64,000 nt of DNA from Diadema antillarum (lineage: Eukaryota). Positions 47,036 through 49,961 of this stretch are shown piece by piece. Both the position numbers and the translations under genes were made by a program. Positions within the stretch are counted from its first letter, which is position 1. The number at the start of each line of letters is the position of its first letter. The DNA is taken from NCBI RefSeq assembly GCF_040938485.1, contig NW_027271504.1, positions 1 through 64,000 on the forward strand. The letters are read 5' to 3'. Below the pieces are notes generated by a model. That model was not told where the DNA came from, searched no databases, and saw only the letters and a list, made by a program, of their open reading frames with translations.

Positions 47036-48981
47036 AACAGGTAGGTGACTATGAACACAACATAGATAACGATCTAGTTACAACACCAGCTGTCGTCGGA
47101 GGTCGTCTGAAGCCATTTTTCCCTGCTTGGGAAAATATCACGAGAGACTCACACATTATTCAAGCAGTTCAAGGCTATACAATAGAATTTGACTCAGAAA
47201 AATTTCCCCCTTCTCGAGAAAAACCTCTGCGCTCTTACAAGCGGAATGCTGAAGAAACAGCCAAGATTGACCATGAGATTCTGGTTCTGGAAGAAAAACA
47301 GGTCATTGAAAAATGTGCCCATGAAGAAGGGGAATTTATTTCAGAGGTTTTCACGAGACCAAAAAAGAATGGAGGAGTTCGATTAATTCTTGACCTGTCC
47401 GAACTCAACAAAAGTGTTCAGTACCAACACTTTAAAATGGATAATATTCAATCTGGTATTCTACTCCTCTCAAAAGGGTGTTATATGGCTTCAGTAGACC
47501 TCCGTGATGCATACTACACAATTCCCATTCACTTAGACTCTCGTAAATATCTCCGCTTCGTATGGAGAAACCAATTGTGGCAGTTCAAAGCTTTGCCAAA
47601 TGGCTTATCTTCCGCCCCAAGACTGTTCACCAAAATACTAAAACCAGTGCTTGCCTTACTAAGACAACAGGGGCACACAGTTTTGTCGTACTTGGACGAC
47701 ACACTGATAATTGGGAACAATAAAGCAGACACTCGCTCAGCAGTGCAAGCCACCACTGACCTTTTGACTAGTCTAGGGTTCATTATTCACTCAGAGAAAT
47801 CGGTACTTGAACCATCCCGTGAGATTGAATTTCTGGGTTTCCATTTAAATACATCTGAAATGAGAATCACCCTCCCAGCCAGTAAAAGCAATGACATTCA
47901 AGATGCATGTCGATCCTTACTTGCTAATAACAAACCTAGTATCCGGGAGGTAGCTAAAGTCATTGGGAAGATTGTGGCTGCCTTACCAGCATCTCAGTAC
48001 GGCCCCTTGCATTACAGGCAGCTGGAAAGGGAAAAAATCAGAGCCCTGAGAAAACAGAAAGGACATTTCGATAGACATATGAGCCTATCAAATAGAGCCA
48101 AGGCGGAACTAGTTTGGTGGTCATCCCATGCACATCTCGTGTCTAAACCCCTGTACCCAGGGAAAGTATCAAAAGAAATAAGAACAGATGCTAGTGGACA
48201 AGGTTGGGGTGCCACAGACCTGCAATCCAAGACAGGTGGTAGATGGAATGCTCAAGAATTAGCAAGAGCAGCAGGTAATGAAATAAACTATCTGGAAATG
48301 CTAGCAGCCGGTTTGGGACTCAAAAGCTTCTGTTCAAATGTCAGAGATGCACATATACTGTTGAGATTAGACAACACCACAGCGGTGACATACTTGAATA
48401 ACATGGGCGGCGTCAAGTCTGAAGCATGTAACGAAATGGCGTTGCAAATTTGGGATTGGTGCAGTAGACGACAAATTTGGATAACAGCATCTCACTTAGC
48501 AGGCTCTAAGAACACAGAAGCTGATACGATGTCAAGGAAATTCAATGACAATATAGAATGGATGCTAGACAAGACAATATTCAATGAGATAGTGCAGAGG
48601 TATGGGTTACCAAACGTAGACCTTTTTGCCACCAGACTGAATGCCCAGCTCCCAACATACGTCTCCTGGAGACCAGATCCAGGGGCATGGGCAGTAGACG
48701 CATTCACTATTGACTGGGGACCCCTAGTATTTTATGCCTTTCCCCCATTTAGCTTGGTTGCAAAGTGTCTCCAAAAAATCAGACAAGATGGCGCTAGGGG
48801 AATTTTGATAGTGCCAAATTGGCCAACACAGCCCTGGTATACCGTACTACGTAACATGCTATTGGAGGAGCCCTGGGTATTGCGAAAACACCAGTTGTTA
48901 ACCCAACCCATTACAGGTAGACCCCATCCACTTACACATCTCTCCCTCTTATGTTGCAGGGTTGGAGCAAACATTTCATAG
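46912..48981 (+). CDS. DIRS ORF2 pol: reverse transcriptase, RNase H and DNA adenine-methyltransferase-like domain; -1 frame relative to gag
   Basis: VGGRL..W start motif; PKKNGGVRLILDL; ASVDLRDAYY; LPNGLSSAPRLFTK; YLDD at 47689-47700; RNase H TDAS/INYLEM/DNTTAV; VDLFA..YAFPPF..VPNWPTQPWY. Frame open from 46858; first ATG lies about 170 codons in. Confidence 0.95.
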   Translation, partial: REGLEGETSRSSSHLHTDSSKGGWQQAANLPQAEPKPGEEIEQVGDYEHNIDNDLVTTPAVVGGRLKPFFPAWENITRDSHIIQAVQGYTIEFDSEKFPPSREKPLRSYKRNAEETAKIDHEILVLEEKQVIEKCAHEEGEFISEVFTRPKKNGGVRLILDLSELNKSVQYQHFKMDNIQSGILLLSKGCYMASVDLRDAYYTIPIHLDSRKYLRFVWRNQLWQFKALPNGLSSAPRLFTKILKPVLALLRQQGHTVLSYLDDTLIIGNNKADTRSAVQATTDLLTSLGFIIHSEKSVLEPSREIEFLGFHLNTSEMRITLPASKSNDIQDACRSLLANNKPSIREVAKVIGKIVAALPASQYGPLHYRQLEREKIRALRKQKGHFDRHMSLSNRAKAELVWWSSHAHLVSKPLYPGKVSKEIRTDASGQGWGATDLQSKTGGRWNAQELARAAGNEINYLEMLAAGLGLKSFCSNVRDAHILLRLDNTTAVTYLNNMGGVKSEACNEMALQIWDWCSRRQIWITASHLAGSKNTEADTMSRKFNDNIEWMLDKTIFNEIVQRYGLPNVDLFATRLNAQLPTYVSWRPDPGAWAVDAFTIDWGPLVFYAFPPFSLVAKCLQKIRQDGARGILIVPNWPTQPWYTVLRNMLLEEPWVLRKHQLLTQPITGRPHPLTHLSLLCCRVGANIS
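47041..48959 (+). other. Candidate spliceosomal intron within DIRS that removes pol
   Basis: Donor CAG|GTAGGT; branch-like CTTAC (A at 48934); pyrimidine tract and TTGCAG|G; joins the pol frame to the YR frame in phase 0. Confidence 0.6.
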
Positions 48982-49961
48982 CTCAAGGACTGACGGAGGA
49001 GACTGCTGATATAATGGCAGCGTCTTGGAGGAAATCCACCAAGGAGCAGTATATGGTGTATATTAGGAAGTGGCAAAGGTTTTGTCATGAGCGTCACTTA
49101 TGTTGGACCCATACGAAGGTGGGAAATTTGTTTGCGTTTTTTAATTCTATGTACAAAAATGGAGCAAGCTACAGCACCTTGAATACATCAAGGAGCGCAC
49201 TAGCATCAGTTGTTCTTCTACGGGACGAGAAATACACCATTTCTACACATCCTTGGATTTGCCGGTACTTCAGGGGCATTTTTAATCTCCGACCACCCAC
49301 TCCGAGATACAGCTTCATATGGGATGTGGGCAAGGTGCTGAGCTACCTCAGACAAGTAACTCCAGCTCATAAGATTTCGCTGTGTCAACTGACACACAAA
49401 GTATGTTTTTTACTAGCGTTGACTTCTGCCCAAAGAGTGCAAACACTTTCATACCTAACCCTTGACAATGTGAAGGCGTCCAAAGATTGTGTGGAAATAG
49501 CAGTGGCTGATTTGATAAAGCAGAGTCAACCTGGGAATGTGGGAGTGAAAGTAACACTGAAAGCCTTTCCCGAGGATAAGAAACTCTGTGTTGTACACTA
49601 TGTTAAAGAATACATTAACAGAACAAGCACATTGAGGAAGGAGGTGAATGCACTATTTGTCACCTACAAGCAACCCCATGGGAAGGCATCAAAGCAAACC
49701 ATCGCTCGATGGATAAAAACTGTGTTGAGAGCATCAGGTATCGACACCGATCTCTTCAAAGCACATTCAACGAGATCGGCGGCAACCTCATCTGCCAAGA
49801 GGAATCATTTTCCAATAGCAGACATTCTCAAGCATGCTGGGTGGAAAAATGAATCCACGTTCAGGAATTTTTACCTTAAACCGGCATCCCAGGCAACATC
49901 TTTTGGACAAGCAGTTCTGGGACAACAGACCTCTAGGAAGGGACAAGATTCAGTCCTGTAA
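48951..49961 (+). CDS. DIRS ORF3 tyrosine recombinase (true start may be the splice acceptor at 48960 or the ATG at 49014)
   Basis: 336-aa ORF with N-terminal SAM-like region and catalytic R (SAQR), HxxR (HSTR), AGW and Y (FRNFY). Confidence 0.95.
   Translation: MLQGWSKHFIAQGLTEETADIMAASWRKSTKEQYMVYIRKWQRFCHERHLCWTHTKVGNLFAFFNSMYKNGASYSTLNTSRSALASVVLLRDEKYTISTHPWICRYFRGIFNLRPPTPRYSFIWDVGKVLSYLRQVTPAHKISLCQLTHKVCFLLALTSAQRVQTLSYLTLDNVKASKDCVEIAVADLIKQSQPGNVGVKVTLKAFPEDKKLCVVHYVKEYINRTSTLRKEVNALFVTYKQPHGKASKQTIARWIKTVLRASGIDTDLFKAHSTRSAATSSAKRNHFPIADILKHAGWKNESTFRNFYLKPASQATSFGQAVLGQQTSRKGQDSVL

What the first reader, a model, noticed from the sequence alone, without database searches (positions are those of the whole stretch)
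47036..49016. A pol-excising intron would convert Gag-Pol to Gag-recombinase, giving three proteins from one DIRS RNA
Seen: a strong donor CAG|GTAGGT at 47040/47041 lies 5 nt after the gag stop and just before the first conserved pol motif. The host RAD1 intron 2 uses the same GTAGGT. A branch-like CTTAC (A48934), pyrimidine tract and TTGCAG|G acceptor at 48959/48960 sit at the start of the YR ORF. Both sites are phase 0 in their frames, so splicing gives ..EEIEQ|GWSKHF.. and removes RT, RNase H and nearly all of the rest of pol (1919 nt). The nominal YR ATG (48951) lies inside the acceptor tract. Inference: unshifted ribosomes make Gag on both RNAs; shifted ribosomes make Gag-Pol on unspliced RNA or Gag-YR (about 780 aa) on spliced RNA, which could bring the recombinase into particles. 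A stop 5 nt before the junction should also escape junction-dependent NMD. Alternative: reinitiation at ATG 49014.
Basis: partly seen in the sequence, partly recalled or inferred. Interest (0 to 1): 0.92.

Follow-up and report, generated by a model that had tools for sequence, protein, structure and literature searches.

The report
Conserved pol-excising intron in DIRS retrotransposons
A sea-urchin DIRS retrotransposon carries a splice donor just after its gag stop and a splice acceptor at the start of its recombinase gene, and the same in-frame pair recurs in about 50 distantly related DIRS families, so these elements very probably make their recombinase from a spliced RNA that lacks the reverse-transcriptase gene.

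Summary
CAG|GTAGGT (47040/47041) and TTGCAG|G (48959/48960) exist, and both are phase 0. They are the best-scoring donor (of 200 GT) and acceptor (of 163 AG) in this intact Diadema antillarum DIRS1-like element.

- **Donor:** 43 of 53 independent DIRS1-like families (pol 40-68% identical) have a strong phase-0 donor 2-41 nt after the gag stop, against 2.4% of control windows. The conservation is in the nucleotides, not the amino acids (Ser always AGY; preceding codon mostly NAG).
- **Acceptor:** the recombinase (YR) frame opens at a top-ranked, phase-0 acceptor in 30 of 49 families (1.7 expected). This is usually TTYAG| in the pol motif FYAFPPFS. Where that AG is lost, both the acceptor and the start of the YR frame have moved together. 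In the window's clade they moved to 48959/60.
- **Other routes are weak:** 14 of 43 families have no AUG for YR. The pol/YR overlap has no conserved slippery site, whereas gag/pol has one in 39 of 41 families.

Most likely, unspliced RNA gives Gag and Gag-Pol, and spliced RNA gives Gag and, after the same -1 frameshift, Gag-YR. I found no report of DIRS splicing. Other first-stage readers noted the same idea on other copies in this genome. Junction reads are still needed.

The parts
45462..45575 (+). Left inverted terminal repeat of the DIRS1-like element
   Evidence: Inverted repeat with 50288-50401 (114 nt, 89%) and with the ICR at 50039-50124 (98%)
45704..47035 (+). gag ORF (443 aa from the first ATG; stop TAG at 47033-47035)
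   Evidence: ORF list. NCBI annotates the same 443-aa product at this locus. gag homologues are found in related loci
46906..46912 (+). -1 slippery heptamer U UUU UUA in the gag frame, inside the gag/pol overlap
   Evidence: a canonical heptamer lies in the gag/pol overlap in 39 of 41 families (U UUU UUA 21 times, A AAA AAC 13 times). The downstream hairpin is not significant (z = -0.85)
46858..47040 (+). pol-frame leader, open from 46858. The stretch from the slippery site to 47040 would be the last coding part of exon 1 for shifted ribosomes
   Evidence: pol frame opens 270 nt before the W70 codon
47038..47046 (+). 5' splice donor CAG|GTAGGT (junction 47040/47041), phase 0 in the pol frame, 5 nt after the gag stop
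   Evidence: Best of 200 GT in the element. A homologous phase-0 donor is present in 43 of 53 families against 2.4% of controls. It lies 2-41 nt after the gag stop in 40 of 43 families
47041..48959 (+). Proposed alternative intron (1919 nt) holding RT, RNase H and the MT-like domain of pol (pol ORF 46921-48981)
   Evidence: 1919 = 3n+2, which gives the -1 change from the pol frame to the YR frame
48730..48752 (+). Relic of the ancestral acceptor in the pol motif FYAFPPFS (TTTAG|C, junction 48752/48753). It is phase 0 in the YR frame, but the frame closes after 14 codons
   Evidence: score 7.2 against 13.1 for 48959/60. This is the productive acceptor in 33 other families
48931..48935 (+). Branch-point-like CTTAC (A at 48934), 25 nt before the acceptor AG
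   Evidence: Sequence resemblance only; it overlaps the pol HPL motif
48936..48959 (+). Polypyrimidine tract and 3' splice acceptor TTGCAG| (junction 48959/48960), phase 0 in the YR frame
   Evidence: Best of 163 AG in pol. Conserved as YAG| in the near clade (L001, L005, L006, L007, L009, L011, L014). In L005 the AG belongs to an in-frame TAG
48960..49961 (+). Tyrosine recombinase coding exon (333 codons plus stop)
   Evidence: Pfam Phage_integrase and SAM-like domains. 99% identical to D. antillarum XP_071478481. YR-frame conservation starts at 48960
48951..48953 (+). Nominal YR ATG, which lies inside the intron's last 9 nt
   Evidence: Absent in L005, L006, L007, L011 and L014
50039..50187 (+). 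Internal complementary region (ICR)
   Evidence: repeats I2, I3, D2
50288..50435 (+). Right inverted terminal repeat with its extension
   Evidence: repeats I1, I3

Best explanation
The element is an intact DIRS1-like retrotransposon whose single transcript is alternatively spliced.

- **Unspliced RNA.** This is the genome and the mRNA for Gag. After a -1 frameshift at U UUU UUA (46906-46912) it also gives Gag-Pol.
- **Spliced RNA.** A fraction of the RNA is spliced from the donor at 47040/41, 5 nt after the gag stop, to the acceptor at 48959/60. This removes the whole RT/RNase H/MT region.
- **In-frame junction.** The donor is phase 0 in the pol frame and the acceptor is phase 0 in the recombinase frame. 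Ribosomes that shifted at the same slippery site therefore read across the junction and make a Gag-leader-recombinase fusion of about 780 aa. Unshifted ribosomes make Gag.

Shown: the sites, their phases, their top rank in the element, their nucleotide-level conservation, and the co-movement of the acceptor and the YR frame across about 50 families. Inferred: that the sites are used by the spliceosome, that translation crosses the junction, and that the short distance from the gag stop to the junction avoids NMD.

The intron looks ancestral to animal DIRS1-like elements. Its acceptor usually sits in the pol motif FYAFPPFS, about 72 codons upstream. That position explains the known 'long ORF overlap' between pol and YR. 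In the window's clade the acceptor has moved to the end of pol.
For: 1. **Donor.** In 43 of 53 families (clusters at 80% pol identity), a phase-0 donor with score 7 or more lies in the 120-nt leader window. The rate in control pol windows is 19 of 779 (binomial P about 7e-60). Only 8 and 1 families have such a site in the other two phases.
2. **The constraint is on nucleotides.**
   - The codon after GTN encodes S, G, C, R, N or T, but its second base (intron position +5) is G in 40 of 43 families.
   - Ser is AGY in 26 of 26 cases, against a pol background of 25% AGY.
   - The preceding codon is CAG, GAG or AAG in 34 of 43.
3. **Donor position.** The donor lies 2-41 nt after the gag stop in 40 of 43 families, median 17 nt. 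It is also present where gag and pol share one frame.
4. **Acceptor, unbiased scan.** All AG in pol were scored in all phases. The best AG is 'productive' (YR-frame phase 0 and downstream of the last YR-frame stop) in 30 of 49 families. Expected: 1.7; the maximum in 200,000 simulations was 10. It is in the top three in 45 of 49.
5. **Acceptor and YR frame move together.**
   - The codon after FPPF is Ser-AGY in 35 families. In 33 of these the best productive acceptor is exactly there.
   - In all 13 families with a non-AG codon (Cys, TCN-Ser, Ala), the acceptor and the start of the YR frame lie elsewhere: 0, -24, -25, -27, -58, -67 or -69 codons.
6. **Near clade.** The YR frame is closed 1-24 codons upstream in 7 of the 8 families (56 in L009). 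In L005 the acceptor's own AG is part of an in-frame TAG, and five families lack the ATG. Six of eight lost the FPPF-Ser AG.
7. **Other routes.** 14 of 43 families have no in-frame ATG before the YR domain. Slippery heptamers occur in 39 of 41 gag/pol overlaps but in only 15 of 49 pol/YR overlaps, scattered, and in none of the short ones, which include the window's.
8. **In the window.** The two sites are the best donor and the best acceptor of the element. The host uses GTAGGT in RAD1.
9. **Gene models.**
   - NCBI models in Diadema setosum and Lingula anatina use these same sites.
   - Argopecten isoforms X2 and X3 differ by 3 aa in the stretch just upstream of the -67 site.
Against: - No RNA evidence was obtainable. 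No junction-bearing ORF appeared among the 120 listed recombinase homologues or among the gag homologues.
- Logan contigs of a related family (L001-L004) run unspliced through both sites. Their library type is unknown.
- The NCBI models may be ab initio. An older Lingula model joins arbitrary sites, and the D. antillarum models of this family are single-exon and start at ATG 48951.
- Both sites overlap coding sequence. The acceptor lies in the pol motifs FYAFPPFS or LLCCR, and the donor sits in the pol-frame leader. Part of the conservation could therefore be protein constraint.
- The families share ancestry, so they are not fully independent.
- My splice matrices are approximations from general knowledge, not trained on these hosts.
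- The window keeps the weaker ancestral acceptor at 48752/53, which would give a dead-end product.
- The window has its own ATG at 48951.
Confidence: 0.68

Rival explanations
1. The recombinase is translated from its own start codon (ATG 48951 or 49014). This would happen by internal initiation or reinitiation on full-length RNA, or from a subgenomic transcript with an internal promoter. The splice-like sites would then be unused by-products of coding sequence.
For: The window, L001 and L009 have an ATG three codons before the acceptor. 29 of 43 families have some in-frame ATG upstream of the YR domain. NCBI annotates a 336-aa protein starting at 48951.
Against: - 14 of 43 families with an intact YR start region have no ATG at all.
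- Where ATGs exist, their positions vary. Many arise from the pol codons GCATGC or GTATGT.
- L005 has Leu at the position of Met 49014 and a stop at the codon before the exon.
- This model does not explain the conserved donor or the co-movement of the acceptor and the YR frame.
Confidence: 0.12
2. The recombinase is made as the end of a Gag-Pol-YR polyprotein by a second -1 frameshift in the pol/YR overlap.
For: YR lies in the -1 frame relative to pol in nearly all loci, just as pol does relative to gag. The overlap is long (about 126 codons) in most families.
Against: Canonical slippery heptamers occur in only 15 of 49 pol/YR overlaps, at scattered positions. None occurs in the short overlaps of WIN, L001, L005 and L014, nor in L007 or L011. 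By contrast, 39 of 41 gag/pol overlaps have one. In L005 the usable overlap is only 11 codons.
Confidence: 0.07
3. The conserved GTRAGT motif binds U1 snRNP without splicing, for example to suppress premature polyadenylation or to control export. The acceptor-like sequences are only pyrimidine-rich coding motifs.
For: Retroviral 5' splice sites have such secondary roles (general knowledge). FYAFPPFS is pyrimidine-rich by its amino-acid content alone.
Against: - Ser after FPPF is AGY in 35 cases and TCN in 2, against a 25% AGY background.
- The YR frame opens exactly at that AG.
- When the AG is lost, a new top-ranked phase-0 acceptor appears at the new frame opening.
- Phase compatibility of donor and acceptor would be unnecessary under this model.
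Confidence: 0.08
4. The GT...AG pair is a chance match picked after the fact.
For: About 200 GT and 163 AG occur in the element, so some in-phase pair is always available.
Against: Both sites are the top-ranked of their kind in the element. Both are conserved, or replaced in a compensating way, across about 50 families with saturated synonymous sites.
Confidence: 0.02

Closest known systems
Retroviral and errantiviral env mRNA (singly spliced subgenomic RNA)
   Same: One promoter; the full-length RNA serves as both genome and gag/pol mRNA. An acceptor near the end of pol brings a downstream gene into a spliced mRNA.
   Different: In retroviruses the donor lies in the 5' leader, upstream of or at the very start of gag, so gag is removed and Env starts at its own AUG. 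Here the donor lies after the complete gag ORF. Gag is kept, and the downstream protein has no conserved AUG and is in frame with the frameshifted leader.
copia (Drosophila) and BARE (barley) splicing that removes pol to make a gag mRNA
   Same: An intron covers most of pol. Splicing changes the ratio of structural to enzymatic products (general knowledge, not tested here).
   Different: In those elements the spliced RNA serves only to overproduce Gag (plus protease in copia). Here exon 2 encodes a separate enzyme, the tyrosine recombinase, which would be fused to Gag.
Foamy virus pol expression from a spliced mRNA
   Same: An enzymatic gene is expressed from a dedicated spliced RNA rather than only as a Gag fusion made by frameshifting on the genomic RNA.
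   Different: Foamy virus Pol is made without Gag. Here the phases imply a Gag-YR fusion that still depends on the gag/pol frameshift.
Published descriptions of DIRS1-like elements (three overlapping ORFs; 'long ORF overlap')
   Same: The same anatomy: gag, RT/RH/MT, YR, ITRs and ICR. The pol/YR overlap seen in about half of the elements matches the acceptor at -72 (PMC3266345).
   Different: The overview (PMC3266345) contains no occurrence of 'splic' or 'intron'. The Dictyostelium papers mention splicing only for an artificial marker intron (PMC7192593; PMC5633606). No expression mechanism for YR is given.

Membership tests
DIRS1-like retrotransposon (order DIRS) | Tyrosine recombinase instead of a DDE integrase | tested here: met
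   Pfam Phage_integrase (1.4e-11) and the SAM-like N-terminal domain in ORF 48951-49961
DIRS1-like retrotransposon (order DIRS) | RT/RNase H followed by a methyltransferase-like domain | tested here: met
   RVT_1 in the pol ORF. Homologues carry precomputed hits to PF05869 (Dam) and PF12237. The C-terminal motifs align across 28 pol proteins
DIRS1-like retrotransposon (order DIRS) | Inverted terminal repeats plus an internal complementary region | tested here: met
   Repeats I1, I2 and I3: 45462-45575 pairs with 50288-50401 and with the ICR at 50039-50124
Spliceosomal GT-AG intron | 5' splice site matching MAG|GTRAGT | tested here: met
   CAG|GTAGGT is top-ranked in the element. The host RAD1 uses GTAGGT. 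The site is conserved in 43 of 53 families
Spliceosomal GT-AG intron | Polypyrimidine tract, YAG acceptor and a branch-point-like YTNAY | tested here: met
   The tract and TTGCAG| are top-ranked among 163 AG. CTTAC lies 25 nt upstream
Spliceosomal GT-AG intron | Exon-exon junction observed in RNA | not testable with these tools
   No read-level RNA data were available. No junction-bearing ORF was found in the protein collections. Gene models using the sites exist, but they may be ab initio
Programmed -1 ribosomal frameshift (gag to pol) | X XXY YYZ heptamer in the upstream frame, inside the overlap | tested here: met
   U UUU UUA at 46906-46912. A canonical heptamer is present in 39 of 41 families
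Programmed -1 ribosomal frameshift (gag to pol) | Stimulatory structure 5-9 nt downstream | tested here: inconclusive
   A GGAGGGGGA/UCCUCCUC hairpin is predicted, but z = -0.85 against shuffles
Retroviral env-type subgenomic mRNA | Donor in the 5' leader upstream of gag, so that gag is spliced out | tested here: not met
   The donor lies 5 nt after the gag stop, and 2-41 nt after it in 40 of 43 families

The most novel reading that the evidence does not exclude
Animal DIRS1-like retrotransposons share an ancient alternative intron that is essentially their whole pol gene. The donor sits just after the gag stop, close enough to escape NMD. The acceptor sits where the recombinase frame opens. 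Frameshifting and splicing combine to give three products from one RNA: Gag, Gag-Pol and Gag-recombinase. In an element without a protease, this would deliver the recombinase to particles. It would also explain both the 'long ORF overlap' and the AUG-less recombinase ORFs.
Probability: 0.55. Interest if true: 0.88.

Novelty: new variant of a known kind. Interest (0 to 1): 0.82.

Why it matters
How DIRS elements express their recombinase has not been explained. The literature I could search only notes overlapping ORFs.

A conserved pol-excising intron would give a concrete and easily tested answer. It would add a new way of combining frameshifting with splicing to set protein ratios in a retroelement. 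It would also account for recombinase ORFs without start codons.

It makes testable predictions: spliced gag-YR RNAs, a Gag-YR protein of about 85 kDa, and possibly pol-less processed copies in genomes.

It matters for annotation too. Gene finders currently call gag and YR as separate single-exon genes and leave pol unannotated, as in D. antillarum.

Tried and rejected
- **A 43-nt mini-intron near the end of pol.** By hand, I tested CAG|GTAGAC at 48916/17 joined to 48959/60 as a way to fuse pol to YR. It lands in the wrong frame and stops after 17 codons, so I rejected it.
- **Viral contigs.** A search with pol found nothing.
- **ENA loci.** P0004 and P0009 returned no DNA.
- **Short Logan contigs carrying YR (L004, L005).** I checked them as possible spliced RNAs. 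Both are unspliced fragments.
- **Long N-terminal extensions of YR homologues (357-412 aa).** The ones checked (P0161, P0164, P0177, P0206, P0229) carry the -1 frame translation of the pol C-terminus upstream of the acceptor, so they are not spliced products.
- **P0151 (573 aa, gag fused to mid-YR).** The junction is elsewhere. It is probably a deletion derivative or a gene-model artefact.
- **HMMER search with the gag of a one-frame family (L022) for Gag-YR fusions.** The long hits are Gag-Pol.
- **P0412 (816 aa, Lingula).** This is a pol-YR gene-model join at other sites.
- **Argopecten isoform X3.** Its locus is not on record. Exon 1 of X2/X3 looks like the start of pol rather than the leader.
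- **Exact look-up of the window's gag.** It found only the window's own locus.
- **Literature searches for DIRS or Ngaro splicing.** They found no report.
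Full report
**What is in the window.**

Positions about 45462-50435 hold an intact DIRS1-like retrotransposon.
- Inverted terminal repeats lie at 45462-45575 and 50288-50401. 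The internal complementary region lies at 50039-50187.
- There are three ORFs. gag runs 45686/45704-47035. pol runs 46921-48981 and matches Pfam RVT_1. The tyrosine recombinase (YR) runs 48951-49961 and matches Pfam Phage_integrase.
- pol is in the -1 frame relative to gag, and YR is in the -1 frame relative to pol.

The host is Diadema antillarum. The YR ORF is 99% identical to XP_071478481. The locus lies between RAD1 and SGF29, and at least seven other contigs encode the identical YR.

- The gag stop is at 47033-35.
- CAG|GTAGGT has its junction at 47040/41 and ends a pol-frame codon.
- CTTAC has its A at 48934.
- TTGCAG|G has its junction at 48959/60, and 48960 starts a YR-frame codon.
- The intron is 1919 nt.
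- ATG 48951 lies inside the acceptor tract.

A host RAD1 exon (Pfam Rad1) does end in CTG|GTAGGT, at 37743/44.

I scored sites with simple position weight matrices written from general knowledge of metazoan consensus. By these, 47041 is the best of 200 GT in the element, and 48959/60 is the best of 163 AG in pol.

**Related elements.**

I obtained three sets of related DNA.
- A pol search found hundreds of homologues at 44-79% identity.
- Logan contigs gave a family with 68% identical pol (L001-L004) and a fragment of another family (L005).
- A metagenome scan with a 28-sequence pol alignment (A1) gave 80 loci with pol 40-56% identical (L006-L085).

Together with the window, these fall into 59 clusters at 80% pol identity. 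At such distances synonymous sites are saturated, so conserved nucleotides imply selection.

**The donor is conserved at the nucleotide level.**

- I anchored each locus on the invariant W70 codon of pol. Nearly every locus has a strong phase-0 (pol-frame) donor between the gag stop and the first conserved pol motif, GGRLK.
- 43 of 53 families have a phase-0 site scoring 7 or more in the 120-nt leader window. Only 19 of 779 control windows inside pol do (2.4%; binomial P about 7e-60). The other two phases give 8 and 1 families.
- Most of the remaining ten families have a weaker GTAAGT- or GTAGGT-type site at the same place, or a strong one just outside the window.
- The encoded residues vary: V followed by S, G, C, R, N or T. 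The nucleotides do not:
  - Intron position +5 is G in 40 of 43 families.
  - Ser is AGY in 26 of 26 cases, against 25% AGY for Ser elsewhere in the same pol genes.
  - Gly is always GGT.
  - The preceding codon is CAG, GAG or AAG in 34 of 43, although AAA, GAA and CAA are the commoner codons in these genes.
- The donor lies 2-41 nt after the gag stop in 40 of 43 families, median 17 nt.
- It is also present in families where gag and pol form one frame (L022, L027, L044, L069, L084).
- It is about 135 nt downstream of the slippery site, too far to be a frameshift stimulator.

**The acceptor marks where the recombinase frame opens.**

At the codon homologous to 48958-60 (Arg of the pol motif LLCCR), AG is conserved only in the nearer clade: WIN, L001, L005, L006, L007, L009, L011 and L014, plus a few others.
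- In that clade the YR frame has a stop 1-24 codons upstream in seven of the eight families (56 codons in L009).
- In L005 the stop is the TAG that contains the acceptor AG.
- L005, L006, L007, L011 and L014 lack the ATG.
- YR-frame similarity ([GSA]WS..F..QG) begins exactly after the AG. The pol tail after it is not conserved.

In most other families that codon is not AG. There the YR frame is open about 72 codons further upstream.
- It opens at TTYAG|, inside the pol motif FYAFPPFS. The upstream stop is often that very TAG.
- An unbiased scan of every AG in pol, in all phases, asked whether the top-scoring AG is 'productive': YR-frame phase 0 and downstream of the last YR-frame stop.
  - The top AG is productive in 30 of 49 families.
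  - 1.7 are expected, and the maximum in 200,000 simulations was 10.
  - A productive AG is in the top three in 45 of 49 families.
- The codon after FPPF is Ser-AGY in 35 families and Ser-TCN in only 2. In 33 of the 35 AGY families the best productive acceptor is exactly there. The exceptions are WIN and L005, which use site 0.
- In all 13 families where that codon is Cys, TCN-Ser or Ala, the acceptor and the opening of the YR frame have moved together. They now lie at 0, -24, -25, -27, -58, -67 or -69 codons, and always in phase 0.
- Six of the eight near-clade families have lost the FPPF-Ser AG. The window keeps a weak copy at 48752/53, where the frame closes after 14 codons.

**Other routes to the recombinase are weak.**

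- *Own start codon.* 14 of 43 families with an intact YR start region have no in-frame ATG between the last stop and the conserved YR domain. Where ATGs exist, their positions vary.
- *A second -1 frameshift.* A canonical heptamer lies in the gag frame of the gag/pol overlap in 39 of 41 families (U UUU UUA 21 times, A AAA AAC 13 times). In the window it is at 46906-46912. By contrast, only 15 of 49 pol/YR overlaps contain any heptamer. Those are scattered, and none occurs in the short overlaps of WIN, L001, L005 and L014, nor in L007 or L011.

**The model.**

Unspliced RNA gives Gag, and Gag-Pol after the -1 shift. Spliced RNA keeps all of gag. On it, unshifted ribosomes stop 5 nt before the junction. 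Shifted ribosomes read the 44-codon leader and continue into YR, giving a Gag-YR protein of about 780 aa.

The donor and acceptor are both phase 0, and relocated acceptors keep that phase. This argues that translation crosses the junction.

The gag stop lies less than about 50 nt from the junction everywhere. This fits escape from junction-dependent NMD, but that is an inference from the general rule.

DIRS elements have no protease. Separate Gag-Pol and Gag-YR fusions would be a simple way to bring both enzymes into particles. This too is an inference.

**Evidence from annotation is weak.**

- NCBI model XP_072166763 of Diadema setosum (L087, a degenerate copy of another family):
  - It starts with a 14-nt coding exon that ends at the leader donor AAG|GTCAGT.
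  - It then splices over 1716 nt to the -67 acceptor.
  - A second intron enters at the site homologous to 48959/60.
- Lingula XP_013418549 (isoform X1) uses the FYAFPPFS acceptor.
- A second Lingula element (L086) has the same donor and acceptor.
- Argopecten isoforms X2 and X3:
  - They differ by 3 aa in the stretch just upstream of the -67 position, which suggests RNA-supported splicing into that acceptor.
  - Their first exon resembles the start of pol rather than the leader.
- However, an older Lingula model joins unrelated sites (P0412). Such models may be ab initio and are not independent of the sequence signals.
- The D. antillarum models of this family are single-exon gag and YR genes.

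**What is missing.**

I found no RNA junction.
- No junction-bearing ORF appeared among the YR or gag homologues.
- The Logan contigs L001-L004 pass unspliced through both sites. Their library type is unknown.

**Literature.**

- The DIRS1-like overview (PMC3266345) contains no occurrence of 'splic' or 'intron'. It reports only that long ORF overlaps occur in half of 28 elements.
- The Xenopus DIRS study (PMC9210276) likewise mentions only overlaps.
- The Dictyostelium papers mention splicing only for an artificial marker intron.
- Searches for DIRS or Ngaro with splicing terms found nothing relevant.
- Subscription-only reviews could not be checked.

**Earlier notes of this scan.**

Several first-stage notes on other pieces of this genome propose the same scheme. 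They are unverified leads and not independent evidence.

**Verdict.**

It is best described as a new variant of retroelement alternative splicing, probably ancestral to animal DIRS1-like elements. It awaits RNA confirmation.

Noticed in passing
window 46906-46912; loci L001-L085: The gag-to-pol -1 slippery heptamer is almost universal in these DIRS1-like families: U UUU UUA or A AAA AAC in 39 of 41. The hairpin predicted downstream in the window is not significant (z = -0.85).
   Followed up: yes
loci L006-L085, about 72 codons before to 54 codons after the site homologous to window 48960: In most families pol and YR are both open over about 126 codons. The pol frame ends at a remarkably constant +54 to +58 codons, with a semi-conserved tail (LSG...K..F..L..SS..G....N.T). 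In the window's family this tail is cut to 7 codons. Whether the tail is functional or a by-product of the conserved YR frame is open.
   Followed up: partly
window 48730-48753: The window keeps the ancestral FYAFPPFS acceptor-like site (TTTAG|C, phase 0 in the YR frame), although the frame closes after 14 codons. It may be a decoy or an unproductive alternative acceptor.
   Followed up: partly
protein P0151 (MetaClust, 573 aa): A gag N-terminal half is fused to the middle of a recombinase, with KG-type microhomology at the join. It may be an internally deleted DIRS copy or a gene-model artefact. It does not use the predicted junction.
   Followed up: partly
L087:8436-9120 (Diadema setosum): A DIRS copy of another family has an insertion of about 685 nt inside YR and a frameshift in the pol leader. 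NCBI's model removes the insertion as an intron.
   Followed up: partly
window 43399-43537: A (CGTC/CGTA)n microsatellite-like array lies between RAD1 and the element.
   Followed up: no
window 50039-50435: The ICR region is partly duplicated: 50039-50159 resembles 50315-50435 (78%), and 50112-50187 is 99% complementary to 50360-50435. Another first-stage note also flagged this.
   Followed up: no
L088-L094 (D. antillarum): At least seven other contigs encode the identical 336-aa YR, each with a 443-aa gag gene at the same spacing. This is a very young, multi-copy family. NCBI annotates gag and YR but not pol.
   Followed up: partly
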